A DNA stretch of 64,000 bases. It comes from Styela clava. Lineage: Eukaryota. The stretch lies in the NCBI RefSeq assembly GCF_964204865.1, contig NC_135251.1, positions 17,732,001 to 17,796,000 on the forward strand, in the 5' to 3' direction. A model generated the notes under the pieces. It was not told the origin of the DNA. It ran no database searches and was given only the letters and a program-made list of their open reading frames with translations. Shown here piece after piece: positions 21,640 through 40,111 of the stretch; position 1 is the stretch's first letter, and each line of letters starts with the position of its first letter. Position numbers and translations under genes: made by a program.

Positions 21640-21775
21640 AGGAGGGGTCTCGTGAACCACCCTACGGCGGCTAGGAGTCCAGCAATCTTCTCGCACATGA
21701 TCATCCCTGCATGGGATTCGAACCCGCGCGGTGGTGAGCGTATTCCTAACGCTTAGCACGATGCGCCACACCGCC
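21640..21775 (-). mobile_element. tRNA-derived SINE copy
   Basis: Minus strand ggcggtgtggcgcatcgtgctaagcg...gggttcgaatccc (A and B boxes). Confidence 0.72.
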
Positions 21776-21782
21776 GATCCGC

Positions 21783-21900
21783 GGCGCTCCCGAAGTATGT
21801 GCACCAAGATGGCGCACAACCTGAACCCTAACCTGGTACACATGCTATGTTCAGGTTGTGCGCCATCTTGGTGCACATACTTCTGGGGGGGGGGGGGGGC
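21783..21900. mobile_element. Short foldback MITE (same family as 48371 and 62072)
   Basis: Perfect ~35-bp inverted arms gaagtatgtgcaccaagatggcgcacaacctgaac / gttcaggttgtgcgccatcttggtgcacatacttc. Confidence 0.75.
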
Positions 21901-22855: not shown

Positions 22856-25732
22856 TTACATATTTGCCAGAAACATCCTTTCTGCCAAGTCATCATAATT
22901 TGTCGTCTTAAATTGAATCTTTATGGTCTTCCATTTGCTTCCCATTATTGGATCATTGCTAGGATTGATGTCATCAACAAATTTGAAAGCTTCCGGTCGA
23001 AGTTGAGGGATAAGAATTCTCTTTACCCGTGCAAAGATACCCCATTTAGTATCACAGTTTTTGCAAAATAATCCATGTTTTCTTTCAGTTCCCCCGTCTT
23101 CAACTGGTCGCTCTATATATTTTGTTTTAAAATCTTCTGTAATGCAAGTATGATTTGTTCCATTAACAACTTCTATATTATCACTCATGCAAGCGAATAT
23201 GCTGCATTTTTTGCAGCGTACTTTGAACCGAGAGGAATTATTCATCTTGTTTGGGTTGGCTGTTGATAATTTTTGCTTGAGACGAAAATCACATACTGTC
23301 AAATTCTGATGTTTTTGTAATTCATCTAGATATTTTCTCTCATTTGTTCTGAACATATTTTGAATGACTTCAGTTGTTTTTTCCATCAGGAGAAATTTTG
23401 ATATATTTACTTTGTCTTTAGCCATAACAGATTGAGATGAAAATTGAACCATGCGCCCTTGTGGTTTTCTTGCCCTCCCCTTGACTTGAGTGCTACTTAT
23501 TTCATTTTTGACATAGTCATAGCAAATGACCAGATTACAATTGACAATATCCATACCCTCGCTCGCAACATCTGGAGTACACACAAGAATTTTGATGTTG
23601 CCATTTCTGAACTCCTCGAGAATTTTTTCCTGTTTGCTGTGAGTTAATCCAGGAGCGGCACCATCTCTACTCTTTCCGACTCCAGTGAAATATTCTGCAC
23701 GGATATTTAGTTTTTTCAATGCTTCTGTTTCATTTAACCAGTCTTTGATTGGTTCAGCATATTGACGCCTTAAAACATTCAACATTGCTCTAGAATCAAG
23801 GTCATTCACAAATGTTTCGAGAATCTCCTTCTCCATCTTGTTTAGATTTTGGTTGGCACAATGAGGATCATTGTAATATGCTTTGAGTTTTTCAATACTT
23901 TTCAAAGCCAGCTGTTGTAGATTTTTTTCAACACTTGTAAGATTTATGTCATGTGATTGACTCAACTTGGCTTCCAAATACTTCAGAGCATCAACAGCGC
24001 GACATTTGAAATGAAGATCAAGTGCCTCATTGAATAATTGTATCTGGGATACACATGCTTGAACATTTCTACAAAAATTAACATCACTGTCTTCCCTGAG
24101 ATATTGGATTGCTTTTGCAGCAAAATCCTTGCACCACTGAATATACTGTTGTGACCCTTTCGCAATAGGTTGTGGTCTGGTTACTCCTTTAATCTTATGG
24201 ATATCCATGTTGTGAAGAATTCCAACCATTTCATCTATTGTTTCACATAGACATAATGTAAATGGGTCATTGATCGTGTTATCATCCAGAACAACACTAT
24301 CTTCTTCAACTTTTGGTGTATATTTATTCAACTCATCTCTGTGTGTCAGAGGAACAGTCACAATTCCACCAGTTGCATCGAGATTTGCGCAAAGCATTAG
24401 CATATGCTCAATAGCATCAAAATCTGTTTTACCTTTCCCAACACCAAGAGTAGCTGTTAATCCCACAATTTGAGGAAGACCATTATGTTTATCAACTTTG
24501 ATATTGAGGTATTGCACCATGATACTGTTGTATGGACTATCTTTTATAGTATGATGACATTCATCAAATACAATCATATTGAACACTTTCAAAGAATTCA
24601 CAGAACCAGTTGTGATAGCATTCAGAAGTATTTGAGCAGTCATAACAACGACATTCGCAGTTCGTAAGGAATCTTCCAATGTAGCTTTGCTGTCTCCAAC
24701 AAGATAATCAATAGACCATCCACTTGCACAAAAATAAGTCTTAATGTTATCACATTGCTGCTTTGCTAGGGAAACTCTTGGAACAATGAATGCTATCTTC
24801 GGATTTTGAGACTTTAGCGTTGAATTGAACCTGGTGTAAATAATGTGGGATGCAACTCTAGTCTTTCCACTACCGGTTGGTGCACAAATAATAACATTCT
24901 TTCCTTCAATTGCATCTTGTGATAGATCTTTTTGATATTCTCTCAATTGTCGTCCTGGCACTTCCACTGTTGTAGACTGACTTTCAGGAATGCCTACTGG
25001 AAACTGTGCAGCCAGCCTTGGAATATTAATTTGACGTGTATTTTGTATCGGGTTTGCAGCGTTTTCCTTGAAACTGGCTTCATGAACCGAACCAACATCA
25101 CATTGTGTGTCACATGTGGCATATTGCACTGTCTCTTTGAATGATAAAGATTCTAGCGATTCAATGAGTTCAGTGTCATAATTGAGATGTCTACAAACAT
25201 CTGTCAATTCGTTCCAACATTTTATCGGCTTTCGAATAAGAATTGAAAGAAGAAATCTGACAGCCTCTCGGTTTCCATCTTCTCTGGCACGACATTCTAT
25301 AAGTTCAAATTCATCTTTTGTGATTCTTTCTCCCATTTTAACTGCAACCTCCTTTGCATTAATTGTTGATTTTATAAGTGGAGAAATAATTGTGAGATAT
25401 TTTCTGATGAACTCTCTATTTTCATTCTCAATAACAGCTCTTTCCACCTCTTCAGCTTCAATTTCTCCACTTACAAGCGCAGCTAACCAGCCATGGCCAC
25501 ATCTACGCATTGCACCAGTGAACTCTTCAATTTGTATATCACTATTTGCACATTCATTAATTATAATCTCAACTGCATCATGAGTCTTTTTACGATTCTT
25601 CATAACTTTGGTATGTTTCTCTGTACCAATTATGAATACATCAGGAAGACTCTCCATCATTTCCAAAGGATCCAAATGATCTTTGAGAACCGTTTTCCAG
25701 TGTTTGAGTAATGCCTTTTCCGCTTCTTTCAT
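22856..25732 (-). CDS. DDX58: RLR-A: full-length RIG-I-like receptor (2 CARD-like domains, DExD/H helicase, pincer, Zn-binding CTD); intronless CDS
   Basis: 958 aa. Q-motif LREYQ, Walker A APTGSGKT, motif II DECHH, motif III GLTAT, motif V VASEGMDI, motif VI QVKGRAR, CTD CKKC...CKNC...KWG, and a helical ~195-aa N-terminus. RIG-I vs MDA5 orthology is not resolved, so the symbol is a family-level call. Confidence 0.9.
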   Translation of the reverse strand: MKEAEKALLKHWKTVLKDHLDPLEMMESLPDVFIIGTEKHTKVMKNRKKTHDAVEIIINECANSDIQIEEFTGAMRRCGHGWLAALVSGEIEAEEVERAVIENENREFIRKYLTIISPLIKSTINAKEVAVKMGERITKDEFELIECRAREDGNREAVRFLLSILIRKPIKCWNELTDVCRHLNYDTELIESLESLSFKETVQYATCDTQCDVGSVHEASFKENAANPIQNTRQINIPRLAAQFPVGIPESQSTTVEVPGRQLREYQKDLSQDAIEGKNVIICAPTGSGKTRVASHIIYTRFNSTLKSQNPKIAFIVPRVSLAKQQCDNIKTYFCASGWSIDYLVGDSKATLEDSLRTANVVVMTAQILLNAITTGSVNSLKVFNMIVFDECHHTIKDSPYNSIMVQYLNIKVDKHNGLPQIVGLTATLGVGKGKTDFDAIEHMLMLCANLDATGGIVTVPLTHRDELNKYTPKVEEDSVVLDDNTINDPFTLCLCETIDEMVGILHNMDIHKIKGVTRPQPIAKGSQQYIQWCKDFAAKAIQYLREDSDVNFCRNVQACVSQIQLFNEALDLHFKCRAVDALKYLEAKLSQSHDINLTSVEKNLQQLALKSIEKLKAYYNDPHCANQNLNKMEKEILETFVNDLDSRAMLNVLRRQYAEPIKDWLNETEALKKLNIRAEYFTGVGKSRDGAAPGLTHSKQEKILEEFRNGNIKILVCTPDVASEGMDIVNCNLVICYDYVKNEISSTQVKGRARKPQGRMVQFSSQSVMAKDKVNISKFLLMEKTTEVIQNMFRTNERKYLDELQKHQNLTVCDFRLKQKLSTANPNKMNNSSRFKVRCKKCSIFACMSDNIEVVNGTNHTCITEDFKTKYIERPVEDGGTERKHGLFCKNCDTKWGIFARVKRILIPQLRPEAFKFVDDINPSNDPIMGSKWKTIKIQFKTTNYDDLAERMFLANM

Positions 25733-25958
25733 GATTGTAAAAAGTGTGTTTTACTCCATCAATAATTCAACAATATTGAGAAAACTTGGAACAATCTGAA
25801 AATCAAAACATCAACTCATCATTCAAGTGTTTGAGTAATGTCTTTTCAGTTTCTTCCATGATTGCAAAAACTGTGTTTTACTCTGTGTTTTTATCAATAA
25901 AATAATTCAACCATATTGAGAAAACTTGAAATAACCTGAAAACCATAATATCAACTCA
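25695..25958 (-). repeat. Tandem duplication (~130 bp) of the RLR-A splice acceptor, 5' UTR and first 11 codons
   Basis: 25695-25818 aligns with 25822-25958; the second copy reads MEETEKTLLKHLNDELMF* (25859-25803) vs the real start MKEAEKALLKHW. Confidence 0.85.
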
Positions 25959-27702
25959 AAATCGAGTTGAGGGACATTTAAGAAAAACAACATGGCTTGT
26001 AAATTCAGCAATAAATAAGTGTTCCGAACAAAATAAAAGTTTTGCTCTGTGCACTCAATACTGGTGTATATTCTTGTCTATGAGACTGGAAGAAAACCAG
26101 CAACTACAATCTAGAAAGTGAGCATGGAAGAAGGAATTAAACTGCTGATATTCAAAGTTATTTATGGGTACAAATTCCCTGTTGAAAATTAATATATATT
26201 AGTATTTGATAAAAATTGATCATAGGCCCTGTATTGCCGAATTTGCGGACTACTTTTCTTACATATATAATTACTTACCGGTACTTATGATTTTTCAATA
26301 AACACCACTGTTAGTAAACATGTAGAGATTGAGGAGTTTTGAATATTTTTTTGACCAAATATCTAATAAGAATGTTTTAATTTCAATATCTCTGATTATG
26401 TTTAGTATCACACCATCTCTTTTAACTTTACTTAAATTTGGAACAACTTTAGATATGGTAGTATACTTTCTGAATAAACTATAATGAAGTAAAAGTGAGT
26501 GAGGTTAATGATAAAAAGTAACATTTATTGATGAATACATCAAATGCCTCATCTAGGGGGTAAGGCAAATTTATGATGCATTGATGTTTAATTGATTTAT
26601 AGTGATTATTATTTTTCTTAAATAAACCTAAAAAATTTATTAACATGCCCTTTATAAGCCAAGTTGAATGAGGTTGTAACCAAATAATGCTTTGTGTCTA
26701 CAAACGAAACATTACGATTCCATGATTCGTGAAATTTTACAAGATAAAAAATATAAGACTCACTAGAAAAGGCAGTAAATGTAAGAAAAATAGAAATGAC
26801 CCTTAACAGAAAATATGAAAACCAAAAATAGTAGAATTTTTACAAACTTACGAAGAATACTCATTGCCAGTTGTATTGGTGCAGTTTTTTTGACTAGACT
26901 TGGAGCATCTTTATCCTGTTGTATTTGAAAAAGTAATGATATCTAGATAGCAGAACATCTGAAATATGAATAACACAACATTATTTACCACATATGGTAA
27001 GCAATAAAAGCTAAAACAAATCAATTGCGAGCAGACTCAGTGGAGATGGTGCCCACTGTTCAGTATAATTTTGAATTGACAAAATAAAGTATATTCATCT
27101 AAAATTCATCTCAATCAGCATACATCTCATTTTCAATTTGTAGAATATTATCAGCTTACATCTAATTTATAAATATTAGTTAACAATAATAAATGCACAC
27201 AATTTTTCAGTATTCGAAAGAAGATAATTTAAAGATATACAAGAGAAATCAGCATGCAACCGAATAATCAAATTCGTACGAATTTGCAAATAAAACTAGT
27301 AATAAATATTATCAAGTTTTCTTTATTTCAGCAAAAGAAGTTTCAATATGAAAGAAGGGGAAAATATTGCAGAGCATGTTTAATGAATTTGAAGAAATAT
27401 AAAATTTATTTATAAACGGTGATATTTTTTAGGATTTTCCAAATAATTTCTCATACACTTGAAGGTCAACAATTAGAAGAGTTGATTATTAGCTTAGAAA
27501 TATGATAATATAACTACAATGCAATAAATGCAAACATAAGCTACAGTGAATTATTCGATCATGAACGACAACATTTCAATGTAAATATTCGTTTTTAGAA
27601 TTTAAAAATGCTTAATGAAGTTTTCAAAGCATTAGAAAATCACAAATGAATTTAAATAAAAGATGGTTTTTAACCAGACAAATTTTACAATCTGATGAAC
27701 AA

Positions 27703-29655
27703 TTAAACAGAATAAATTTGTTTCAATTCAGTATACGAAATTTCTTGAAACGATATCTTAGGAACTATCTTCTTCCATTGATTTCCCTTTATTGGATTAT
27801 CTGGAGGATGTTCATTATTAACAAAATGCAGTGCTCCAGAATTTAGAAGTGGAATCGTTATCTCAACATGCTTTGTGAAATTTCCCCATTTTTTATCACA
27901 ATTTTTACAAAAATAGTCAAATTTCTTCTCAGTTCCACCATCCTTCATTGGACGTCTGATGTACTGGGTGCCAAAATGTTTTCTTATGCAAGTATAAATA
28001 TTACCGCTGAGAACTCTTATTTCATTACCTTTGCAAACCAACACTGGACAATCACTGCAGTACACTTCAAAACCCTGACTTAAAACTGCATCTTTTGACA
28101 CAGAAGAAACTTGCTTCAATGACTTTTCAACTTTTGAAGTCATTGCCATGGCGGATTCAAGAATTGGCTTATTTAGGTCAGATTTGTCAAGTTTTTCTTG
28201 CATTTCCTCTATCGCTGTCAAGTAATCCTTTTTGTTATTTTTAGCCATAAATTGAATTTTTTTAATGACTTCACTTTCGGGATCAAATTCATCATTTTGT
28301 GATAGCGTTATAATTCCACTTGTAGCCCCAAGGTTTGCACAAAGAGTTAGTACATCTTTTTCACTTTTATTGGCACCGGGGCTACTTGCAAATCCAATAA
28401 CTTGAGGGACATTTCTGGCATGCTGGTCCTTTAACTTATGGTAATATGACATGATGACATTATATAGATGTTTTTTTCTTGCATGCTGACAATCCGCGAA
28501 TACAATCAAATCAAATTTCTCCAAGGAATCCAGTGTTCCATTTTCCAGACTATCAGTAAGTAATTTTGGTGTTACAATAATGATATTTGAAACATTAACT
28601 GCATCCATAAAATTATTGGTTTTCCCACCTCCGAATACTTTCGCAATGGACCAATTGTATGAAGATAGTAGAATAGACTCAATCTTGGCACAGTATTCAT
28701 GGGCCAGTTCAACTTCTGGAACAATTACCACAATTTTTGATTTCGCGGGAGAGGGAAATCTTCTGGAAATGATAAAAGACATGATGCGGGGTATTTCAAC
28801 TTCTTTTGGTGCATACATTATCACATTCTTACCAATAGAGGCATCATATGCCAAAGTTATTTGTTGATTTTCAAGTGGAATATCTGTTGCTTCACTTTCA
28901 TTCGAAGCCCCATTCGTAGTTTGATGATGTGTAACCAAGCTTGTGTAACCCATTACTTTTGACTGAACATCTATGGTATCAGTTTCTCTATAAGAAACAG
29001 ATTCTTCAGCTACTATGTCACTACTTGGATTACAGAATGCTTTACTCGAGACATCAAGAAACACTCCATTTAACAATTCAATTAGTTCTCCATTGTAATT
29101 TGAATCTATCAAAATTTTTCTGAAACATGTCCACCATCCTGGTGGTTGTCTTACTAAAATAGAAAGTAGTTTTCTGACACCATGTTGATTTCCTTCTTGA
29201 TCAACTCTACTCTCTATCTCTTCAAATTCTTCAGTTCTTATTATACCATGATCTCTTAGACGCTGTCCAACTTCTTTTGCATTGATTATGTCTCTTAGGT
29301 GAGGAGATATGAGAGTAAGAAATTTCCTCATTCGTATCGCATTTTCATATCTGAAAACCACATCCTCAACATCTGAGTCTTCTACACATCCATTCATAAA
29401 TTCTGCCAACACAGAATGTTTAGACTCAAAAATTGCAGCAGTAAACTCTTCAAATGTCATGTCACTGGCTATTACTTCTTCTATTATGAGTTGTACAGCA
29501 ACATGCTTGTTCTTTCGATTAGATTGAATTTGTTCATATGCCCGAGAACCAATTTGAAATAACTGTGGTAATGCATCTATTATATCTAAAGGATCGAGGA
29601 ATTCTTTCAAAACTTGTTTCCAGCTTTCCAGCACTAGAATATGATCTTGTTTCAT
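27703..29655 (-). CDS. RLR-B: truncated RIG-I-like receptor (2 CARD-like, degenerate Hel1, CTD; no Hel2i/Hel2), 650 aa, intronless
   Basis: First ATG at 29655 (MKQDHILVLESWKQ) aligns with the paralogue starts, and an AG acceptor lies at 29791-29792. Walker A is replaced by APKEVEIP, motif II by ADCQH, motif III by GFASS. After LCANLGATSGIITL the chain jumps to the pincer end and an intact CSDC...CKNC...KWG CTD. Confidence 0.85.
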   Translation of the reverse strand: MKQDHILVLESWKQVLKEFLDPLDIIDALPQLFQIGSRAYEQIQSNRKNKHVAVQLIIEEVIASDMTFEEFTAAIFESKHSVLAEFMNGCVEDSDVEDVVFRYENAIRMRKFLTLISPHLRDIINAKEVGQRLRDHGIIRTEEFEEIESRVDQEGNQHGVRKLLSILVRQPPGWWTCFRKILIDSNYNGELIELLNGVFLDVSSKAFCNPSSDIVAEESVSYRETDTIDVQSKVMGYTSLVTHHQTTNGASNESEATDIPLENQQITLAYDASIGKNVIMYAPKEVEIPRIMSFIISRRFPSPAKSKIVVIVPEVELAHEYCAKIESILLSSYNWSIAKVFGGGKTNNFMDAVNVSNIIIVTPKLLTDSLENGTLDSLEKFDLIVFADCQHARKKHLYNVIMSYYHKLKDQHARNVPQVIGFASSPGANKSEKDVLTLCANLGATSGIITLSQNDEFDPESEVIKKIQFMAKNNKKDYLTAIEEMQEKLDKSDLNKPILESAMAMTSKVEKSLKQVSSVSKDAVLSQGFEVYCSDCPVLVCKGNEIRVLSGNIYTCIRKHFGTQYIRRPMKDGGTEKKFDYFCKNCDKKWGNFTKHVEITIPLLNSGALHFVNNEHPPDNPIKGNQWKKIVPKISFQEISYTELKQIYSV

Positions 29656-30069
29656 GTTGCCGAGTGATGCACTAATTGGTAAACTGTTTATTTGCAAAAA
29701 CACAACATCTTCAGTTCGAGGTATTCCGCAGTTTGAAGTATAGGCAATCTTTCGAATGAATCTTCCACCTAAATCTGAATCGAACACTTTCTAAAAAAAA
29801 CAAGTTTTCATCAATTTTATATTTCTGTCATAATAAATATCTTGGTTTGAAATCACCAAATTGAATGAAATACATGAATGAAATTTTGCACTAGCATAAT
29901 ATATCTGAAAGTAAATAGATCTTGGGACCACCTGCATTTTCCAAATTAAGAAGTAACACAGTGGTTTTATAGAGCTATTTTTCCATAATAAAACCAGTTC
30001 CTTATTTCTAAGATTCCTTTCAGCTTGACATTCACATTTTTGTCACCCTGAAATACCAATATCTACAGT

Positions 30070-30148
30070 AGTTCACTTTAAAGTTTCTTTATCAAGTTCA
30101 CTTTTCGTTTTATATTGCTTCACGAATACGTCTTCGCTCAGTTTCATT
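30070..30148 (-). promoter_or_regulatory. Cluster of IRF-element-like motifs upstream of RLR-B
   Basis: Minus strand has aaaacgaaaagtgaact, aaagtgaact, aaagaaact and aatgaaactga within 80 bp, about 300 bp upstream of the RLR-B acceptor. Confidence 0.35.
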
Positions 30149-32112
30149 AGATAAATATAAAGCTATACACACTTGTGCATCCCATTCATGCTTATAATAT
30201 TTTAGGTTTTAATTTAAAATCTGAAAGAAAATATACACCAATCACAAACATATAACTACAAAAATTACCATACATATTTTGAATCCAAATTCATGGATAC
30301 TTGAGTCTTGATAGTATACTGTGAGATATTTGAATATAACAAGTACCAGCCAGAGTACATGTTAAAGCAATTAATCCAGGAAAGAGCATCACACATGTAT
30401 AAAAGATATAGAGGTTGAAAAATACAGCAGATTAGAAAAAATATGAAAGACATTAGTCAAATTTGAACCCCTGTTGAATGTATTAATAATGTGTATAGTG
30501 TTTAAATGTATGTTTTGAAAAAAAACATATGTGTACATGAATATGAACATTTTGATTGATAAACCACAAAAATGGATTTAAACCATCCTAGATATAAATG
30601 GGGCTTCTGTAGCTTAATACAGTGAAAGAGTTTTTGTACGGTTATTCTATTTACATATTATAATGTTATCAAGTGTGTCCCTAATTCCACCTTAAAAGCA
30701 TTGAATTACTTACATGAAATTACATATATATTTACTTACACTATAAAACTTAGGACTCAATAATACCTGACAATGATAAAATAGAAAACAATTTTCTGGG
30801 CTATGTATGTACTCTTTCATAAACCATTTTTTGTCAAATGTGGTACATATAAAAAACTCTTAGCCATAATCACACAAAATAAAATATAGTTGATAGCTGG
30901 CACTTTTTAATCAGCAGAATGGAGAAGAAATCATGTCCTGTATCAATGGTATCAGATAAAGCCTAACTAGTGGAGCTAACTTGGCATACTGCATTATTAA
31001 TCTTTCTATTTGCATCTCGGAATTATAAGATGAAATTGAATTTTGTTTTAGGAATGTTACCACACACCCTCAAACCCCCCGAGTGAATATGAAAACGCAC
31101 AATGACACAGAAATAAAACAATAACCAAACATGTTCAATACTGTTCAAGTATATTTCTGACTGGAACAAAAATTACTAATTTGCATATGATAAAGAATAC
31201 AACAACAATCAATAAAACTGAAGAATTTAGGCTTAATTTATTATTAATATAGTTTATTAGGAGAGGTTCCATATTTCAAGTCTTGCATTTATGGATAGAA
31301 GATATTTCAATAAAAAATACTGCATTTACAATGATTGGGTACACAAATGCCTATTTATTTTATCGGGAATATTAAATAGTTACACATAGAAAAATGTCAA
31401 CATCAACATTGAATGTATATAAAAAGCTTAACACTAAATTTTTTTAAAAACAAATTATACAAAAAAAGCTCAATAGTGTTCCTTTGACAGCAGGTTTTAC
31501 AAGACTATTGAATGAGTATGATGCTACCATGAGATAATGTTGAAATATCTCTTCAAGGTAAAATCCACATTAATACGCAATTTTTTATTAAAAAAAATAA
31601 GAACAAACAATAATATTAGGGTAATGGGGAGAAGGACATAGTAGAAACAATTTCACTAAAAGACTTACGATAATAGCCAGATTGAATTAGGAAGAATTTA
31701 TTTATATAAAAATAATAATATGTAAATCATGATTACAAAAATTATAAAATGCACAAAATTATGTGTTGTTTCATGAAAATATCTTTATTTCTAATTAGTG
31801 TGTAACAACTTGGTTGTATAAACAAATTATTTGCTTTATCCTTTAAAAGCAACATAATTTTTACGAAATTCTGATTGAACATATAAAAATAGTAGTTAAG
31901 TGATCCCAAGTAAATATTTATTGCCAAAAAGATTTGGAGCACAGCCATTTCACAATGGAAACGAAAACAGTGGCTAATTGTAATCTGCATAATAACTACG
32001 GTATATCATCAACTCAGGAGTATGAAAACAAGTCAATCCTATGGAATCTACATATCCTATATGACATCGATTCTGAGAGTAAAACAATTATAATTAGGTA
32101 GACAACAAAATT

Positions 32113-34962
32113 TCAAGGACTCATCACTTTCGTCTCGCCTCTAGTATCCCTGGATTCTGTTAACGCTATTCGACCATCACACTGAAGCAGCTCACTTTGC
32201 TTGTCTGTGAGAATTTGTATGTAACGATTTTCATTTTGTTGACGCAGGCGTTCAATAGTCTCAGCTGCTCGCTCCATCACTAATCTTTTATCAACCTTTG
32301 CTTTATGGTCAATTGGTACTGTTTTTGGCATGACGCTAACTATACAAGGTGATTTTGCCGAGGCGTTAATCTTTTGCTTTGAAGATTTACCTGGTGCATT
32401 ACAGTTGTAATAGATAATCAAGTCACATGCTACAGAAATATTTGGAACAATATCTTTCATGCAAATCAAGGCTTTTATCCTATTATATTTGAAGTCATTC
32501 AAACAAACATTTTTCTGTCTTTGGCAGACAGTAGACGGAGGTTCTGAATCTTCAAGGAATTTTGCATTGAGTGAAAAGTTTGCCAGTCCTCGTTCTTCAT
32601 TCAACCAATTTTTCAAATATGGCATTACATCACCTTCATTGACCACAAGAAGCAGCTTAGCATTTTTATTTCTCTGTATACATGTTGATATTTGTTTTTT
32701 GATTTCAATCAAAGTATCGTTTTGGCAGCTCCCATCTTGTACATAAGATCGTAATTTTGCAATCTGTTTGTCCGAAATATCGAACAGACGTTTCACAACA
32801 ACCTTATTTGCAACATTATAATGTGGATGTTTTTTAACATTTTCTATCAAAAAATCTAGAGCATCATCAGCACGACACAGTAATGAAATTGACAATGCTT
32901 GATTGTATATTCTGAGATAGGAAGACCCGAGTTTTAAAATTGAAGATAAAGTTACGTCATTAATTTGTTTTGCTTTTTCAAACAGAGAATTGCACCACTG
33001 AATGTATTCAACACTGCCTTTAGACAGAGAACCAGATTTTGGAACTCCATATTTCATTATTGAAGGAATGGTTAGCAAATTGAGCATCTCATCAATTGTC
33101 TCACATATACACAAATTGAATGGATCAGTGATATGCTGTTTTTCTATAAAACTATCCTGTTTTTCCAGCTGTGATTTGGAGCGCCTAGATGTCAGTTTGG
33201 GAGTGGCACGTCCGGTAGTAATTCCACCAACAGCATTTAGAAGAGCGCAAAGAGCCCAAGTATACTTTTCTGCTGTTTCTTGTTTCTGAATGTTGCCATA
33301 TCCCAAGTTTGCACAAAGACCGAGGACTTGAGGAAGATGCATAGAATTGGTACGTTGCTTTGCTTTCAAATATTCTAGCATTATATGTTTTAATGGTCCA
33401 GTTTTGTAAACATTCTGACATTCCTCAATAATTATCATGTCAAATTGAGTAATATCATAAGTATCAGATGCTTCAACTAAGGCAGTCAAAAGGACCTGTG
33501 GTGTGATCATAATAACCTGAGATTTTTCCAACAAATAATTCAGTTTATCTGTTCTTCCATCATGAAAAGATACAGCCCACTCTGTTGATGCAAAATATCT
33601 TTCAATAAGGTAATGATCTTTTTTTATTTTTGGAACAATAAAAGCAACTTTTAGACCATTTGAATCTAGTATTGATGGAAATCTTGATTGTATAATATGA
33701 ACTGCCATTTTGGTGCTGTCGGCGACTTCAGATCCATAAATAATGACATTTTGTCCATTGATTGGTTTTGATGACAAACCTATTTGTTCTGGCTGAAGAG
33801 CATCTTTGCCAGTTACCTCTTTTTGATTTCTCATTAAAGAAACATTTATGCCTGCTTCTTTTGGAATGATGCTATTTGCAGGTGAATTTTTCACAGAACT
33901 ACTACTAACAGATCGATTTCTTTGCTTTCTCAGTAACGAAGGATTGAAGCCTGCTTCTTTTGGAATGATGCTATTTGCAGGTGAATTGACAGGACTGGCA
34001 TTTACAGGTTGATTTCTTTGCCTTCTTAATGATGAAAAATTAAAGCCTGCTTTTTTCGGAATAATGTCATTTGTTGGTGAAGACACAAGGGTGTTATTTA
34101 CACGTTGATTTCTACCAGAGAGACCAAAACTTTTTTGAAAAGTTTGATTTCGTGGGTAAGTTGAACTAACTCGCCAGCATTGTGCTTCCCGCATTCTAGC
34201 AGGTGCAATGGCAAAATTTGAAACATTCTTTCCATGAAGCTCATCCATTTGTATTAGAGAAGAAAAAAAATTATCATCTTCATCGCTTGCTTCTTCCTTT
34301 AGAAGAGCAGCTTTTGTCTCCATTGACATATCCTCAGGCTCAATAGAACATTTGAAATCTTTCAGTTCATCAGGCAAATCATGAAAAATTTGTTTAAGCT
34401 CAGTGCTGTAGTTTTTCTTTTCTAAAATTTGCTTGAAGTTTTTTAGCCATTTAGTATTACTTCTTACAAGTATTTGTAACAACATTTTTACACCTTCAAT
34501 ATTCCCACGATTCTTTGATGCTGCATCAATGCGTTCATTTTGTTCTTCAGATATGAACTCTCCTAATTTCAATTCCATGGATATTTCAGATGCATTTATA
34601 CCATTAGTGATATTTTCCATGAAAACTGTAAGAAACTTGCTCACATACTGATGATATTCATAATTATTCAGTGCTTGTTCTTTCTTTGTTTCATTTCCAA
34701 TAATCAGTGCATGTAGCCATTCATGCTGATTTTTGATTGCCTTGAGAAATTGGTTATAAGCCTCACCTGGCATTTTTTCCAGATGATTAATCATGACACT
34801 AACAGCTTCATGTGGCATATCTTGCTTTGCCATAACATCTGTTCGCGCTGCCGAATTGAGATCAAATAAATCTGGAATTTCTGCCATTACTTGTGTTGCA
34901 TTGAGATATAATTTAAGATACTCTCTCCATTTTTCAATAGTTTTCTTTTGAACATCATTCAT
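32113..34962 (-). CDS. RLR-C: RIG-I-like pseudo-helicase (2 CARD-like, repeat linker, degenerate Hel1/Hel2i/Hel2, pincer; no CTD), 949 aa, intronless
   Basis: Colinear with RLR-A (DPFNLCICETIDEM, KGSVEYIQWC, LCRADDALDFL, CDLIIYY). Walker A is YGSEVADST, motif II EECQN, motif III GLCAN; motifs V and VI are lost. It ends after the pincer with no CxxC pairs. AG acceptor near 35006. Confidence 0.87.
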   Translation of the reverse strand: MNDVQKKTIEKWREYLKLYLNATQVMAEIPDLFDLNSAARTDVMAKQDMPHEAVSVMINHLEKMPGEAYNQFLKAIKNQHEWLHALIIGNETKKEQALNNYEYHQYVSKFLTVFMENITNGINASEISMELKLGEFISEEQNERIDAASKNRGNIEGVKMLLQILVRSNTKWLKNFKQILEKKNYSTELKQIFHDLPDELKDFKCSIEPEDMSMETKAALLKEEASDEDDNFFSSLIQMDELHGKNVSNFAIAPARMREAQCWRVSSTYPRNQTFQKSFGLSGRNQRVNNTLVSSPTNDIIPKKAGFNFSSLRRQRNQPVNASPVNSPANSIIPKEAGFNPSLLRKQRNRSVSSSSVKNSPANSIIPKEAGINVSLMRNQKEVTGKDALQPEQIGLSSKPINGQNVIIYGSEVADSTKMAVHIIQSRFPSILDSNGLKVAFIVPKIKKDHYLIERYFASTEWAVSFHDGRTDKLNYLLEKSQVIMITPQVLLTALVEASDTYDITQFDMIIIEECQNVYKTGPLKHIMLEYLKAKQRTNSMHLPQVLGLCANLGYGNIQKQETAEKYTWALCALLNAVGGITTGRATPKLTSRRSKSQLEKQDSFIEKQHITDPFNLCICETIDEMLNLLTIPSIMKYGVPKSGSLSKGSVEYIQWCNSLFEKAKQINDVTLSSILKLGSSYLRIYNQALSISLLCRADDALDFLIENVKKHPHYNVANKVVVKRLFDISDKQIAKLRSYVQDGSCQNDTLIEIKKQISTCIQRNKNAKLLLVVNEGDVMPYLKNWLNEERGLANFSLNAKFLEDSEPPSTVCQRQKNVCLNDFKYNRIKALICMKDIVPNISVACDLIIYYNCNAPGKSSKQKINASAKSPCIVSVMPKTVPIDHKAKVDKRLVMERAAETIERLRQQNENRYIQILTDKQSELLQCDGRIALTESRDTRGETKVMSP
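33821..34110 (-). repeat. Coding tandem repeat in RLR-C (96-99 nt, 32-33 aa, 3 copies)
   Basis: Unit RNQxVxxSxVNSPANSIIPKEAGFNxSxLRxQ; DNA core gcctgcttcttttggaatgatgctatttgcaggtgaatt at about 33850 and 33949, with a variant at 34045. Confidence 0.9.
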
Positions 34963-37129
34963 GATGTATAATTCAATACGTTTCTACTATAAAAACAAGA
35001 AAACCCTGTGAAAATAGGTAAATTGAAGTTTAAACTTATTGGAATGACATAAATTTAACTCTGATAGCTTTAATAATTATTGAATAAAAAGTTAGATAGT
35101 TGCACATCCACGCAGGCAAAATCTGAGCACAAGAAACAAGATAAAAGTGAACCAAAGCCTGACTGATGCTCATTTAGGTAATATATATTTGTGATAAAAA
35201 CTATATTACTATCGGCTTTCTGACACTCTTGATTTCTGTGAAATCTGGCAAAGTCTATAGACAATCTGTCAAGACTAAAATAGCTTGCAACCCTAATATT
35301 TTCTATCGTTATAAGCAAGGAATGTTTTGACAAAGACTATAATGTTTTCACAAAGACTTCATTTAGAGAAAGAAAAAAATTCATGAAGAGTTCATACTTG
35401 TCGCGACGTATACTGAACAAATGAAAGCAAAGTGCTTACAAAGCAATTGTATTACTACAACAACACCAAACTAGCTGATTCAAAAATGTAATTCTTACAG
35501 ATACTTGTTTTCGAGGAAAGAAAAATTAAGTTCAGAATAATTATTTCATACTGTTGCGCATACTGAATAAATTAAAAAGTAAAATTCTTACAAAGCAATT
35601 GTGTTAACCAAGGCAGTCAATTGTTTTACGAAAAAAGGAAATGCATCTAGAAAATTAGACAGAAAGTGAATGGACAGTGCAGAAACCAAACAAATATTCT
35701 CGGCATTAAACGTTTACGTTATTCTCACAAAATAAACCATCAAGAAAATCTAAATAAATTGTGCTTACATAAATAGTTTCTGCATATGTCCACATGCCAC
35801 AACACTAAACTACCAATATTGCAGTTAAATTTGAATAAGTTTGCCTTTCTGAAGAAAAATTTCACACAAATTTAATATGTATGATATAGTAATATTTTAA
35901 ATTGGAGATTCATTTCATATCAGTATCAATATAGTGGTATAGTTACCAGGCACACGAATTCTGTGCCTCCGGAAACCAACATTAACTGTGTTTACATAAG
36001 GCAAATATTGATTTCAATTTTTAAAATAATTGAATACTGCTCCACTTATATTGTAGGTGTATTGTACAAACAAATTTCCGTACAAAAAATACGGTGCTTG
36101 TTTCTACTCATCTTAATGAAACTTACAGGTTTTTGTGATAAATATGATTCCCTTTTATTACTTAGTAATGTCTTCTTATGAATTGTAGATCAAGTTTCAA
36201 TACTCAAGTGAATCTTGAGTACTGAAACTATTTTTATGGTCAATGTTTATTGAAATAATTTAATCAAAATCCAACCCAAAGACTCCATAACTATCTGGCC
36301 ACCTTGAAATTTTTTATTCTTTCATTACCTCCTCCATTTCCATAATTGATTATGCCAATATCTTGAACTTGATTACTCCCTAAATTCAATATTCACAGGT
36401 TAATATTTCAAGGATGTGACTTTTTCAATTAGTAGGTGGAGATCAGCAGCGCTCTCAACCACTGGACCGAGGATATTAACATTTGTTATTGTTTTGCCAC
36501 ATTTCGCACGGCTCAAAAATCAAAATTACAATTAAATGATTTTTATGTCGCAAATCTCAAAATATGAATATGATTTATATCAGACAGGCCATTCACAGCT
36601 AATAATAGTAATACCATTTCAATATGATGTATAAGCATGCTTAGATGAGCAGCACAAGCCCTAAATTCTGGCATGGATTTAGGAAAGATAAACTCATTGT
36701 TCTTCTTCGACCAATCACAGTTCCATACCACTTTGATGTACATTCAGTATGCATTAGGAATGACGTTGACAAACTGCAACAACTGGCAAATCTGGCGAGC
36801 GTATTCCTAACGCTTGGCCCGTTGAGCCACACCGCCGCGTTTTTAAGCTGGGAAAATGCAATATTCTGACATTAATGCACCAGAAAAAGCATACGGTAAG
36901 CAAATGAAGCAGCACAGACACAGAAAAGGATTCTCATGTTTGTGTACTTGAGAATACTTTATCCCTTCCCCCAGGCCCCGTCAGTAAAAAGAGCACAGAA
37001 AAACTTTTAGAAACGAACGAACTAACTCAGTATATCGTAATTTTCCGTCTCTCAGTAGCTGTTGAAATGCTGTAACGTATAACTCCAAAATCGTTGTGCA
37101 ATAAATAATGCTCTATATTACCAAGACTT

Positions 37130-39163: not shown

Positions 39164-40111
39164 ATGAGCAGCGATTCAGATCTTGCTACTCAAGCGACCT
39201 GTAATGATGCTTCAACGTGTAAAAGATACGCTGTTCAGAAAGGATATTGGAATGATCCATATATATCGCATATGGTAAAAAGTGTGGGATCTCGTAAACC
39301 TCCAGAGATAAACCGAGGATATTATGCGAGAGTAGAATCAGTGTGGATACTGATTAAAAAATTTATTCATGCTACTGAAAGAAAGTGCCAAATTGTTAGT
39401 TTAGGTGCCGGCTTGGACACTACGTTCTGGAGACTTTGTGGAGAAGAATTAAGTCCTATTCGATATATTGAACTCGACTTTCCTAATGTCACAATGCGTA
39501 AAGTTCAAACTATCAAATCGAAAACTTTATTAACACAAGCCTTTAACACATCAGAAAACGATACAAAGATTGAAACATCAAGCATTATTTCAAATAAATA
39601 TTCCTTACTTCCTGCGGATTTGCGTGACATAGAACTTGTTGAAAAACAGCTAAAACTAGCTCAAATTGATTTTACTATACCTACTCTCTTTCTCACTGAG
39701 TGTGTTCTTGTGTACATGTCATCCAAAAATTCGAATGCTATCTTGAAATGGGTGACAACCAATTTTGAAAACTGTATGTTTGTCAATTACGAACAGGTCA
39801 ATATGAACGATCGTTTTGGACATGTTATGATTGAAAACTTGAAATCTCGTGACTGTGACATCCCTGGTGTTGATGTATGTGAAAGCCTTGAATCTCAGCG
39901 AAAACGATTTCAAGAAAATGGCTGGGATCAAGTAAATTGTATTACTATGTGGTCTGTGTATTCTATTTTACCACAATCTGATGTTCAGAGAATGGAACGT
40001 CTTGAGTTCATGGATGAACAAGAACTTCTTGAACAGTTATTGACTCATTATTGCTTATGTTGGGCAACAAAGGCGGGTGAGAGTTTCAACTTGAAAGAAA
40101 TTGAACTCTGA
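39164..40111 (+). CDS. LCMT1: Leucine carboxyl methyltransferase 1 (PP2A C-subunit methyltransferase), single-exon CDS
   Basis: 315 aa; QATCNDASTCKRYAVQKGYWNDPY, PPEINRGYYARV, SAM-binding QIVSLGAGLDT, TECVLVYM, YEQVNMNDRFGHVM, LEFMDEQE; acceptor AG at 39140-39141. Confidence 0.96.
   Translation: MSSDSDLATQATCNDASTCKRYAVQKGYWNDPYISHMVKSVGSRKPPEINRGYYARVESVWILIKKFIHATERKCQIVSLGAGLDTTFWRLCGEELSPIRYIELDFPNVTMRKVQTIKSKTLLTQAFNTSENDTKIETSSIISNKYSLLPADLRDIELVEKQLKLAQIDFTIPTLFLTECVLVYMSSKNSNAILKWVTTNFENCMFVNYEQVNMNDRFGHVMIENLKSRDCDIPGVDVCESLESQRKRFQENGWDQVNCITMWSVYSILPQSDVQRMERLEFMDEQELLEQLLTHYCLCWATKAGESFNLKEIEL

What the first reader, a model, noticed from the sequence alone, without database searches (positions are those of the whole stretch)
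22856..34962. RLR triad: one catalytic sensor plus two ATPase-dead paralogues with complementary domain losses
Seen: three tandem, co-oriented, intronless RLR ORFs with homologous CARD-like N-termini. A has all helicase motifs and the CTD. B has a dead Hel1 and the CTD but no Hel2i/Hel2. C has a dead helicase body and pincer but no CTD. B and C are strongly diverged from A, yet remain open over 650 and 949 codons. Known: the vertebrate RLR regulator LGP2 lacks CARDs and keeps its ATPase, the opposite architecture. Inference: this may be an undescribed antiviral module in which CARD-bearing pseudo-helicases act as helpers, decoys/guards or a split receptor (B supplying the CTD, C supplying Hel2i/Hel2/pincer), analogous to paired sensor/helper NLRs.
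Basis: partly seen in the sequence, partly recalled or inferred. Interest (0 to 1): 0.88.

Follow-up and report, generated by a model that had tools for sequence, protein, structure and literature searches.

The report
Sea-squirt RIG-I cluster with dead-helicase paralogues
A sea squirt (Styela clava or a near relative) carries three neighbouring RIG-I-like virus-sensor genes: one looks enzymatically intact, and two have lost their ATP-using motifs and different domains yet stay open, appear to be transcribed, and in one case are conserved in another species, so they are probably non-enzymatic helpers or regulators, not dead genes.

Summary
Three co-oriented minus-strand ORFs are RIG-I-like receptor (RLR) paralogues with tandem CARDs.

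- **A** (958 aa) has every domain and intact motifs Q, I, II, III and VI.
- **B** (650 aa) is 2CARD, a dead Hel1, a helical linker and the zinc CTD.
- **C** (949 aa) is 2CARD, a 180-aa disordered repeat linker, a dead Hel1-Hel2i-Hel2 body and the pincer. It has no CTD.

A is 98% identical to a Styela clava RIG-I-like protein. B and C are absent from the protein collections searched.

B and C are not decaying copies.
- Their frames are open at chance odds of 6e-24 and 4e-33.
- Losses cluster in the ATP motifs, while core and Hel2i residues are kept.
- Contigs of three transcriptome-sized runs cover both genes and skip the spacer between them. That these runs are RNA is a guess.
- Indels inside B are in-frame.
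- C has a reciprocal-best orthologue in another, unnamed species with the same architecture (clade support 100/100).

Dead ATP motifs were seen almost only in this tunicate clade among 261 RLR homologues.

I read B and C as maintained pseudo-helicases that modulate CARD signalling. This is a new variant of a known kind, and its function is untested.

The parts
22856..25732 (-). RLR-A: complete RIG-I-like receptor (2CARD, Hel1, Hel2i, Hel2, pincer, zinc CTD) with intact motifs Q, I, II, III and VI
   Evidence: It is 98% identical to a Styela clava 'RIG-I-like' protein, P0001. Its tree branch is short, 0.47.
27703..29655 (-). RLR-B ORF, 650 aa from the ATG at 29655: 2CARD, dead Hel1, helical linker, CTD; no Hel2i or Hel2
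   Evidence: AlphaFold2 mean pLDDT is 80.8. A transcript-like contig covers it.
29056..29655 (-). B tandem CARDs (aa 1-200)
   Evidence: Pfam CARD_2 at 60 bits; pLDDT is mostly 86-97, dipping to 73-74 at the CARD1-CARD2 junction; 41-43% identical to A's CARDs.
28306..28878 (-). B Hel1 RecA-like fold (aa 260-450), with motifs I, II and III destroyed and the TP of motif Ic (TPK for TPQ) and the PQ-x-G stretch kept
28075..28293 (-). B helical linker (aa 455-527) in place of Hel2i, Hel2 and the pincer; low confidence, and variable in length in the population (a 45-nt in-frame deletion allele at 28118-28162)
27706..28071 (-). B CTD (aa 529-650), with four zinc cysteines and the clade-specific DGGTE-x-K loop shared with A
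   Evidence: Pfam RIG-I_C-RD at 53 bits; alignment to the human RIG-I CTD; pLDDT mostly above 90; 45% identical to A's CTD.
32113..34962 (-). RLR-C ORF, 949 aa: 2CARD, disordered repeat linker, dead Hel1, Hel2i, dead Hel2, pincer; no CTD
   Evidence: AlphaFold2 mean pLDDT is 76.7. Foldseek top matches are MDA5 and RIG-I helicases. P0122 is its orthologue.
34363..34962 (-). C tandem CARDs (aa 1-200)
   Evidence: Pfam CARD_2 at 60 bits; matches the human RIG-I 2CARD structures 6bzh and 4nqk over aa 3-188; pLDDT 88-97.
33805..34347 (-). C disordered, mildly basic Ser/Asn/Pro-rich linker (aa 206-386). It holds three 32-33 aa repeats, each carrying the conserved short motif SIIPKEAG-F/Y or a near variant
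   Evidence: Tandem repeat at 33828-34113 with a 96-nt period and at 33791-34081; pLDDT below 50; the same motif is present in P0122.
33208..33795 (-). C Hel1 (aa 390-585), with motifs I, II and III destroyed
   Evidence: It is 38% identical to the Hel1 of P0122.
32668..33135 (-). C Hel2i insertion domain (aa 610-765); 11 of 12 family-conserved residues are kept
   Evidence: Pfam RIG-I_C at 32 bits.
32164..32655 (-). C Hel2 (aa 770-880, motifs V and VI destroyed) and pincer helices (aa 884-933)
30290..32112 (-). Probable unspliced 3' UTR of C, about 1.8 kb
   Evidence: Contigs of runs X1, X4 and X9 begin at 30290, 30364 and 30222 and run without a break into the C ORF.
29765..30221 (.). Spacer between the C transcript's end and the B transcript's start, taken as B's promoter region. 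Transcriptome-sized runs X1 and X4 leave almost all of it uncovered; the DNA run X10 covers it
   Evidence: tables 2 and 8.

Best explanation
[quoted passage not shown] One member, A, is a complete and presumably ATP-hydrolysing RNA sensor. Two neighbouring paralogues, B and C, are pseudo-helicases: they keep the tandem CARD signalling module and well-folded RLR domains but have lost the ATP-binding and hydrolysis motifs. B has also lost Hel2i and Hel2, and C has lost the CTD.

Shown here: domain content, motif loss, open frames, apparent transcription, and an orthologue of C in another species.

Inferred: B and C act without catalysis, joining or modifying CARD assemblies that signal to a CARD adaptor. 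A candidate adaptor is the tail-anchored MAVS-like ORF on piece C6. B lacks Hel2i, the surface that hides CARD2 in resting RIG-I, but keeps an A-like zinc CTD. It would therefore bind the same RNA feature as A with its CARDs permanently exposed, acting as an ATP-independent co-sensor or amplifier, or as a cap on A's CARD oligomer. C keeps Hel2i and the pincer but cannot cap RNA ends. Its conserved linker motif fits a docking site, so it would act as a regulator or adaptor, not as a sensor.
For: - Architecture and motifs.
- Selective loss: at 112 columns conserved in at least 85% of RLRs, the changes in B and C cluster in motifs Q, I, II, III, V and VI. Hydrophobic-core residues are kept, and so are B's zinc ligands and C's Hel2i residues.
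- Open frames: chance odds are 6e-24 and 3.5e-33, despite long branches of 1.34 and 1.2 against 0.47 for A.
- Expression: B is held by 9 transcriptome-sized runs from 3 studies (53-79 Mb of contigs, against 333-361 Mb for the DNA runs). Contigs of X4 cover B as one discrete unit. Contigs of X1, X4 and X9 cover C's 3' part from near-identical ends. X1 and X4 show a gap at 29765-30290, which only the DNA run X10 and the deeper run X9 cover.
- Constraint within the population: both indel events listed inside B are in-frame (45 nt; 2+1 nt), while 7 of 10 listed non-coding indels are not multiples of 3. Differences run at 0.5% in the C ORF against 1.2% in its UTR, and at about 1% in B against 4.4% in its 3' flank.
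- Conservation across species: P0122 (870 aa, from a Logan contig of another species) and C are reciprocal best hits. P0122 also has no CTD, has dead motifs, and carries the same linker motif. The C+P0122 clade has 100/100 support, and monophyly of A+B+C is rejected (p-AU 3e-7).
- The same other-species set includes P0121 (full length, dead motifs) and P0123 (no Hel1).
- Dead motifs are rare elsewhere: of 253 homologues with both helicase halves aligned, 238 keep motifs I, II and VI by a simple pattern test.
- Downstream parts exist in this genome: a MAVS-like ORF (N-terminal CARD_2, disordered middle with two ELCIS motifs, C-terminal membrane anchor) and TRAF-type MATH domains.
Against: - No functional data exist.
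- The runs are labelled 'RNA?' by guess, contigs cannot give strand or level, and one X9 contig runs from B towards A, so some DNA or read-through cannot be excluded.
- Polymorphism counts are small: in C, 4 non-synonymous against 3 synonymous, which fits only weak constraint.
- No B-type architecture (CARD, Hel1, CTD) was found in any other species. B's place next to P0121 and P0123 is only moderately supported (85/88), and an A+B clade is not rejected (p = 0.14). B's domain loss may therefore be young.
- The source species of P0121, P0122 and P0123 is unknown, so the age of the C lineage cannot be dated.
- The fast evolution of B and C could reflect relaxed selection as easily as an arms race.
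Confidence: 0.6

Rival explanations
1. B and C are pseudogenes or duplicates on their way to loss. The open frames are leftovers and the transcripts are noise.
For: Long branches; loss of every catalytic motif and of whole domains; a non-synonymous to synonymous count of 4:3 in C; absence from the protein collections searched.
Against: Frames of 650 and 949 codons stay open at about 65% A+T, with chance odds of 6e-24 and 3.5e-33. Folded domains keep 28-45% identity to A while the linkers fall to about 15%. AlphaFold2 gives pLDDT above 85-90 across most of the CARDs, the helicase folds and the CTD. Indels inside B are in-frame only. C-type orthologue P0122 has the same architecture.
Confidence: 0.05
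2. Split receptor, the first reader's strongest version: B and C pair up, so that B's CTD and C's Hel2i, Hel2 and pincer rebuild one RNA-clamping receptor.
For: In S. clava the missing parts are complementary, and the two genes are adjacent and co-oriented.
Against: Both carry Hel1, and both Hel1 copies are dead, so no ATPase site can be rebuilt. The complementarity is not conserved: the other species has a full-length dead form and a form without Hel1 alongside the C type. No interface evidence exists; complexes were not modelled.
Confidence: 0.07
3. Decoy or guard: B and C mimic A's surfaces to absorb or detect viral antagonists of RLRs, which is why they evolve fast and need no catalysis.
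For: B and C have fast-evolving branches beside a slowly evolving A. They keep surfaces (CARDs, Hel2i, CTD) and lose chemistry. Integrated-decoy NLRs are an analogy from general knowledge.
Against: No test for positive selection was possible. No tunicate viral antagonist is known. Branch length alone does not separate an arms race from relaxed constraint.
Confidence: 0.15
4. Independent, non-canonical sensors or adaptors. B is a stand-alone ATP-independent RNA-end sensor. C is an RLR-derived signalling adaptor that recruits a TRAF through its repeated P-x-E-x-x-aromatic motif. Neither depends on A.
For: B keeps the zinc CTD and has free CARDs. PKEAGF in C and PKEAGY in P0122 sit at aligned positions within a linker that is otherwise only 26% identical between the two. 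TRAF MATH domains are present in the genome.
Against: The TRAF6-type consensus is short; shuffled linkers give a match 10-16% of the time. Only one of C's three repeats fits it exactly. Which TRAF is the TRAF6 orthologue was not determined.
Confidence: 0.13

Closest known systems
Vertebrate RIG-I (DDX58)
   Same: A has the same domain order, intact helicase motifs, a zinc CTD and tandem CARDs. In the tree, the tunicate clade groups with vertebrate RIG-I and invertebrate RLRs, apart from the MDA5 clade used as outgroup.
   Different: A is only about 25-31% identical to vertebrate RIG-I sequences. Its CTD loop lacks the human 5'ppp-pocket residues F853 and H847 and has a clade-specific DGGTE-x-K stretch instead. 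The gene has no introns in the coding part.
LGP2 (DHX58), the regulatory RLR of jawed vertebrates
   Same: It is a paralogue that regulates and does not signal, and it arose by domain loss from a full RLR.
   Different: LGP2 lost the CARDs and kept ATPase activity and the CTD (PMC3879448; general knowledge). B and C kept the CARDs and lost the ATPase motifs, and one of them lost the CTD.
C. elegans DRH-2
   Same: It is an RLR paralogue adjacent to the active drh-1. It behaves as a negative regulator, and was proposed to compete with DRH-1 for partners (PMC2629121).
   Different: It works in an RNAi pathway, it belongs to a different lineage, and it arose independently. Its domain content was not checked here.
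Non-canonical RLRs of lophotrochozoans (Yao et al. 2022, PMC8998645)
   Same: Lineage-specific RLR expansion with altered domain sets and immune-related expression.
   Different: There the variation is grafting of N-terminal domains (Death, DED, IG, SAM) onto the helicase. That paper does not discuss loss of ATPase motifs. In my alignment the mollusc hits keep motifs I, II and VI, with two partial exceptions.
Paired sensor/helper NLRs with degenerate nucleotide-binding motifs (plants)
   Same: The concept is the same: immune receptors of one family, genetically linked, with one member lacking a working NTPase switch and acting with a competent partner (general knowledge, not tested here).
   Different: They belong to an unrelated protein family (STAND NTPases), and there is no evidence yet that A, B and C interact.

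Membership tests
RIG-I-like receptors (RLR), for A | DExD/H helicase core (Hel1 and Hel2) with intact ATP motifs Q, I, II, III and VI | tested here: met
   LREYQ, APTGSGKT, DECHH, TAT, QVKGRARK. Pfam DEAD at 90 bits and Helicase_C at 51 bits.
RIG-I-like receptors (RLR), for A | Hel2i insertion domain, zinc-binding CTD and N-terminal tandem CARDs | tested here: met
   RIG-I_C at 48.7 bits, RIG-I_C-RD at 66.9 bits, CARD_2 at 42.6 bits. CKKC and CKNC are present.
RIG-I-like receptors (RLR), for B | Descent from the RLR family (homology of the CARDs, Hel1 and CTD) | tested here: met
   BLASTP to A at 1e-84, plus the CTD at 3e-31. PDB hits to RIG-I, MDA5 and LGP2. Placement in the tree.
RIG-I-like receptors (RLR), for B | Complete helicase core with Hel2i and Hel2 | tested here: not met
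   There is no Pfam RIG-I_C or Helicase_C match. About 70 helical residues replace roughly 370.
RIG-I-like receptors (RLR), for B | ATP-binding and hydrolysis motifs | tested here: not met
   Motif I is APKEVEIP, motif II is ADCQH, and motif VI is deleted. Enzyme activity itself cannot be tested with these tools.
RIG-I-like receptors (RLR), for B | Zinc-binding CTD | tested here: met
   RIG-I_C-RD at 53 bits. All four cysteines align with human C810, C813, C864 and C869. pLDDT is mostly above 90. RNA binding was not tested.
RIG-I-like receptors (RLR), for C | Helicase fold with Hel2i and the pincer | tested here: met
   RIG-I_C at 32 bits. The AlphaFold2 model has Hel1, Hel2i, Hel2 and two pincer helices. 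Foldseek top hits are MDA5 and RIG-I, E about 4e-23.
RIG-I-like receptors (RLR), for C | ATP-binding and hydrolysis motifs | tested here: not met
   Motif I is GSEVADST, motif II is EECQN, motif III is CAN, and motif VI is QKINASA.
RIG-I-like receptors (RLR), for C | Zinc-binding CTD | tested here: not met
   The ORF ends 16 residues after the pincer. There is no RIG-I_C-RD match. The same holds for orthologue P0122.
MAVS-type adaptor (candidate on piece C6, L025:133-1812, minus strand) | A single N-terminal CARD of the RLR/MAVS type, a disordered middle with signalling motifs, and a C-terminal membrane anchor | tested here: inconclusive
   CARD_2 scores 30.9 bits in the six-frame search (above cut-off) but 27.4 bits on the ORF (cut-off 28.2). 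There is a hydrophobic C-terminal tail and two ELCIS motifs. No PDB sequence match was found.

The most novel reading that the evidence does not exclude
A, B and C form a hetero-oligomeric CARD signalosome in which only A reads RNA with ATP-dependent proofreading. B is an ATP-independent binder of the same RNA feature with permanently exposed CARDs, and lowers the threshold for CARD tetramer nucleation. C is an RLR turned adaptor whose repeated, conserved P-x-E-x-x-aromatic motif recruits a TRAF directly. If so, this would be an animal counterpart of sensor/helper receptor sets, built from pseudo-helicases and old enough to be shared by at least two tunicate species.
Probability: 0.2. Interest if true: 0.8.

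Novelty: new variant of a known kind. Interest (0 to 1): 0.62.

Why it matters
RLR biology rests on ATP-driven discrimination of viral from self RNA. The only well-known regulatory paralogue, LGP2, keeps its ATPase and lacks CARDs. Here a chordate close to vertebrates keeps the opposite design: CARD-bearing RLRs without a working ATP site, conserved in at least one case across species and sitting beside an intact sensor. If they modulate signalling, they offer natural separation-of-function variants. One has CARD and CTD without Hel2i autoinhibition. The other has CARD, Hel2i and pincer without the CTD. Such variants bear on how CARD release, RNA capping and proofreading can be uncoupled. They also show that pseudo-enzyme evolution, common in kinases and NLRs, occurs in the RLR family. 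A MAVS-like tail-anchored CARD protein with pLxIS-like motifs in the same genome makes the pathway testable in a tunicate.

Tried and rejected
- **Word-indexed protein searches.** B alone found nothing. An alignment of the dead clade found only P0122. This is a limit of the index, not evidence of absence.
- **The look-up of encoding contigs.** I could not fetch the RefSeq S. clava locus, the contigs behind P0121, P0122 and P0123, their source species or their DNA. No dN/dS and no comparison between assemblies was therefore possible.
- **Exact look-up.** A, B, C and the MAVS-like ORF are not in the collection as exact sequences.
- **ISRE-like motif GAAANNGAAA.** There are 6 matches in the window against 7 expected. 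The one upstream of A lies in a duplicated copy of A's first codons, so I rejected it as a signal.
- **Repeat flanking the triad (21732-21776 and 36793-36837).** The left copy lies beside a short palindromic element at about 21783-21890 that is high-copy genome-wide (MITE-like). I read the pair as interspersed repeat pieces, not as a boundary of the duplication; the copy number of the 45-nt piece itself was not established.
- **TRAF6-specific zinc-finger family PF18048.** There was no match anywhere, including the controls, so the search was uninformative.
- **The 45-nt 'skip' in B in run X9.** I considered an intron. Its ends are AA..GA, it is 15 codons long, and it sits in the low-confidence linker. 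I read it as an in-frame deletion allele.
- **PDB sequence search with the MAVS-like CARD.** No hit.
- **Structure models.** They were used only for domain content. The pTM values of 0.43 and 0.54 are too low to read inter-domain packing such as CARD2 on Hel2i.
- **Complexes.** A-B, A-C and B-C were not modelled, because no multimer tool is offered.
Full report
**What is there.** Between 22856 and 34962 the minus strand carries three long ORFs and nothing else of size.
- A runs 22856-25732 (958 aa).
- B runs 27703-29787 from a GTG. The ATG at 29655 gives 650 aa and aligns with the N-termini of A and C.
- C runs 32113-34962 (949 aa).

Pfam finds CARD_2, DEAD, RIG-I_C (the Hel2i insertion), Helicase_C and RIG-I_C-RD in A. 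It finds CARD_2, a weak DEAD match and RIG-I_C-RD in B, and CARD_2 plus RIG-I_C in C. The three are clear paralogues: A-B is 32% identical (1e-84) and 44% in the CTD, A-C is 32% (2e-75), and B-C is 28-30% over the CARDs and Hel1.

**Motifs.** In a multiple alignment with vertebrate, lamprey and brachiopod RLRs and with 261 homologues, the motifs read as follows.

| Motif | A | B | C |
|---|---|---|---|
| I | APTGSGKT | APKEVEIP | GSEVADST |
| II | DECHH | ADCQH | EECQN |
| VI | QVKGRARK | deleted (all of Hel2i and Hel2 are missing) | QKINASA |

A also keeps LREYQ (motif Q) and TAT (motif III). B keeps both CTD cysteine pairs. C stops 16 residues after the pincer, without a CTD.

**Organism and genomic setting.** A is 98% identical to a protein named 'RIG-I-like' in Styela clava (P0001). 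The next best hits are only 31-34% identical and come from limpets, abalone, Lingula and amphioxus, with cartilaginous and ray-finned fishes at about 27-30%. The window is piece C2:17732001-17796000 of a 377-Mb assembly.

The triad is not the only set of RLRs in the genome. CTD and Hel2 exons of intron-containing RLR-like genes lie on piece C3, with two copies near 4.57-4.60 Mb and several between 5.77 and 5.90 Mb. An annotated S. clava RLR of 1018 aa (P0127) has a CARD-region match and intact motifs. 'One catalytic sensor' is therefore true of the cluster, not of the animal.

CARD_2 matches in six frames are limited to A, B, C and one further ORF on piece C6. Ciona was already known to have two RIG-I homologues (PMC3879448).

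**Are B and C real genes?** Several independent lines say yes.
1. *Open frames.* At 35% G+C a codon is a stop with probability of about 0.08. Frames of 651 and 950 codons would stay open by chance with odds of 6e-24 and 3.5e-33, and the other five frames hold 26-93 stops each. On the tree B and C have long branches (1.34 and 1.2 changes per site, against 0.47 for A). That much neutral change would have closed the frames many times over.
2. *The loss is selective.* I took 112 columns conserved in at least 85% of catalytically normal RLRs. In B and C the substitutions pile up in motifs Q, I, II, III, V and VI. Core residues are kept, as are the Thr-Pro of motif Ic (TPK in B, TPQ in C) and the Pro-Gln-x-Gly stretch. 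B keeps the four zinc ligands, and C keeps 11 of 12 conserved Hel2i positions.
3. *Domains are conserved and linkers are not.* A-B identity is 41%, 43%, 39% and 45% in CARD1, CARD2, Hel1 and the CTD, but 15% in the linker.
4. *The domains fold.* AlphaFold2 with an 81-82 row alignment gives confident folds. In B the CARDs, Hel1 and the CTD are mostly above pLDDT 85, and the 455-527 linker is at about 50-65. In C the CARDs, Hel1, Hel2i, Hel2 and two long pincer helices are mostly above 85, and residues 206-386 are disordered. Foldseek returns only RLR structures at the top.

**Transcription.** Nine runs from three studies have 53-79 Mb of contigs, the size of a transcriptome. Four runs from one sample have 333-361 Mb, the size of the genome. 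The tool labels the small ones 'RNA?' as a guess.

I laid X1, X4, X9 and X10 on 27500-33499.
- The genome-sized run X10 covers everything evenly.
- X4 has one contig over 27500-29764. That is all of B with about 110 nt upstream of the ATG, and from the contig's length it extends about 425 nt below 27500.
- X4 has nothing in roughly 29765-30363.
- X1, X4 and X9 each have a contig that starts at 30290, 30364 and 30222 and runs without a break through 32113 into C. From their lengths these contigs would end near the repeat at about 33880.

Shared ends in three studies, plus a hole exactly between the two units, are what mRNAs give and what DNA does not. I take this as good but not conclusive evidence that both genes are transcribed, that C has an unspliced 3' UTR of about 1.8 kb, and that neither gene has an intron in the part laid. 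Two caveats apply. Strand and level cannot be read from contigs. One X9 contig also continues from B towards A, which may be read-through or contaminating DNA.

**Variation.**
- In run X1 the C ORF part has 7 differences in 1387 nt (3 synonymous, 4 non-synonymous) and no indel. Its UTR has 22 differences and several indels in 1823 nt.
- In B, the listed indels inside the ORF are a 45-nt skip (aa 498-513, in the low-confidence linker) and a 2+1-nt pair. Both preserve the frame. Of 10 listed non-coding indels, 7 are not multiples of three.
- The counts are small. The direction fits frame and sequence constraint, with at most moderate constraint on amino-acid change in C.

**Conservation in another species.** I searched 1.84 billion representatives with a profile of A, B and C. 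B and C themselves are not in the library, and they were also not found by word search or exact look-up. As far as these collections go, they are unannotated.

The nearest proteins are three unnamed products of Logan contigs.
- P0121 (876 aa) has the full architecture, but motif I reads IPTGHVGA, motif II DNCHT and motif VI KITGRALQ.
- P0123 (712 aa) is 60-74% identical to P0121 across the folded domains (45-58% in the linker and pincer). It has CARDs, Hel2i, Hel2 and the CTD, but no Hel1.
- P0122 (870 aa) has CARDs, a dead helicase with Hel2i, and no CTD.

None of the three is encoded in this genome; their best matches here are the triad, at 33-37% identity. They therefore come from another species.

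P0122 and C are reciprocal best hits. In a maximum-likelihood tree of 18 RLRs the tunicate sequences form one clade (100/100), and C+P0122 form a clade (100/100). B joins P0121 and P0123 with moderate support (85/88). The AU test rejects a clade of A+B+C (p = 3e-7) but does not reject A+B (p = 0.14).

So the CTD-less dead C type predates the split of two species and has kept its architecture at about 30% identity. For C this rules out the pseudogene reading. B's particular deletion may be younger, but dead, CARD-bearing relatives with other domain losses exist on its side of the tree too.

Dead motifs are otherwise rare. Among homologues with Hel1 aligned, only B, C, P0121 and P0122 clearly have dead motifs I and II. 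Two mollusc or unnamed sequences are partial cases, and the few others flagged are N-terminally truncated at motif I. By a simple pattern test, 238 of 253 keep motifs I, II and VI.

**How it probably works.** Two facts are established for RIG-I. In the resting state CARD2 is held on Hel2i. RNA capping by the CTD, together with ATP-dependent clamping by the helicase, releases the CARDs. The CARDs then tetramerise and seed MAVS CARD filaments, and ATP hydrolysis serves proofreading. I draw the following inferences against that background.

- *B.* B has no Hel2i, so it has no known place to hide CARD2. It keeps a CTD that is 45% identical to A's, with the four zinc ligands and the same clade-specific DGGTE-x-K loop where human RIG-I has F853-K858. 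B therefore looks like a pair of CARDs tethered to an RNA-binding CTD by an inert RecA-like domain. I think it most likely binds the RNA feature that A binds and contributes, or blocks, CARDs in the same assembly.
- *C.* C keeps Hel2i and the pincer but cannot cap RNA ends or use ATP. The canonical release mechanism is therefore unavailable to it. Its 180-residue disordered, mildly basic linker carries three 32-33 aa repeats. Their core, SIIPKEAG-F, recurs as SIIPKEAG-Y in P0122, in a linker that is otherwise 26% identical between the two. A conserved short motif in a disordered region suggests docking. PKEAGF and PKEAGY fit the TRAF6 consensus P-x-E-x-x-aromatic, but that pattern turns up in 10-16% of shuffled linkers, so this is a lead only. 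TRAF-type MATH domains are present in the genome.
- *A plausible receiver.* A 559-aa single ORF on piece C6 has an N-terminal CARD_2 match (27-31 bits) and a long Ser/Asn-rich middle. The middle contains an internal duplication that carries ELCIS twice, which fits the pLxIS pattern. The ORF ends in a hydrophobic tail. This is the MAVS layout.

I put 0.6 on the general statement that B and C are maintained, non-catalytic modulators or adaptors of CARD signalling. The specific roles carry much less.

**Rivals.**
- *Pseudogenes (0.05).* This is contradicted by the evidence above.
- *Split receptor (0.07).* Both proteins carry a dead Hel1, so nothing catalytic is rebuilt, and the complementarity is not conserved in the other species.
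- *Decoy or guard (0.15).* It fits the fast branches and the kept surfaces, but no selection test was possible.
- *Independent sensor or adaptor (0.13).* It rests on the CTD and on the linker motif.

**Comparison with what is known.** By descent all three are RLRs. A passes every family feature. B fails on Hel2i, Hel2 and the ATP motifs. C fails on the CTD and the ATP motifs.
- LGP2, the known regulatory RLR, has the opposite pattern: no CARDs, with the ATPase and CTD kept.
- C. elegans drh-2 lies next to drh-1 and was reported as a negative regulator that may compete for partners (PMC2629121). It is the nearest functional precedent.
- In lophotrochozoan RLR expansions the N-terminal domain varies, not the ATP site (PMC8998645).
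- My literature searches for tunicate or pseudo-enzyme RLRs found no description of CARD-bearing ATPase-dead RLRs. The library is partial.

I class the finding as a new variant of a known kind.

**Limits.**
I have no DNA and no species name for P0121, P0122 and P0123, and no second S. clava haplotype to compare.
- No multimer modelling was available.

Noticed in passing
L025:133-1812 (minus strand), about G000:C6:11058631-11060310: A single 559-aa ORF with the MAVS layout. It has an N-terminal CARD_2 match (27-31 bits, borderline) and a long Ser/Asn-rich disordered middle. An internal duplication in the middle carries two ELCIS (pLxIS-like) motifs at aa 353 and 411. The ORF ends in a C-terminal hydrophobic tail anchor. 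It is the only CARD_2 match in the genome outside A, B and C.
   Followed up: partly
window 33791-34113 (C aa about 285-390): Three 96-99 nt repeats encode a mildly basic Ser/Pro-rich unit. Its core, SIIPKEAG-F, is conserved as SIIPKEAG-Y in the other-species orthologue P0122. PKEAGF and PKEAGY fit the TRAF6 consensus P-x-E-x-x-aromatic, but shuffled linkers match 10-16% of the time.
   Followed up: partly
window 25695-25958: A local tandem duplication sits just upstream of A: 25695-25756 against 25822-25883 (89%), and 25761-25818 against 25901-25958 (88%). It copies A's start codon and first 12 or so codons about 130 nt upstream, creating a possible upstream ORF in A's leader.
   Followed up: no
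window 21783-21890; related piece at 36793-36837: A palindromic element of about 105 nt (38-nt arms, 97% complementary). It has more than 2,000 first-look candidates across the genome at 95-99% identity, so it is a young MITE-like repeat. A 45-nt repeat just beside it (21732-21776) recurs at 89% on the other side of the triad, at 36793-36837.
   Followed up: partly
G000:C3 about 4.567-4.598 Mb and 5.767-5.905 Mb (L006-L012, L015-L021): Further RLR-like genes that contain introns (Hel2 and CTD exons): two copies in one place and about five or six in a second cluster, some exons with in-frame stops. The annotated S. clava RLR P0127 (1018 aa, intact motifs) has predicted isoforms without the CTD (P0258, P0259). 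Its own genomic locus was not mapped here.
   Followed up: partly
window 28118-28162 and 28662-28666: In-frame length polymorphisms in B. One is a 45-nt deletion allele (aa 498-513 of the linker), seen in run X9. The other is a net 3-nt deletion (aa 330-332), seen in X9 and at about half depth in the DNA run X10.
   Followed up: partly
window 2803-3699, 4655-5251, 39164-40111 (plus strand): Neighbouring single-ORF housekeeping genes: a Sas10/Utp3 domain protein, a 2Fe-2S ferredoxin-like protein and a leucine carboxyl methyltransferase. Intronless coding regions are therefore not peculiar to the RLR triad in this region.
   Followed up: no
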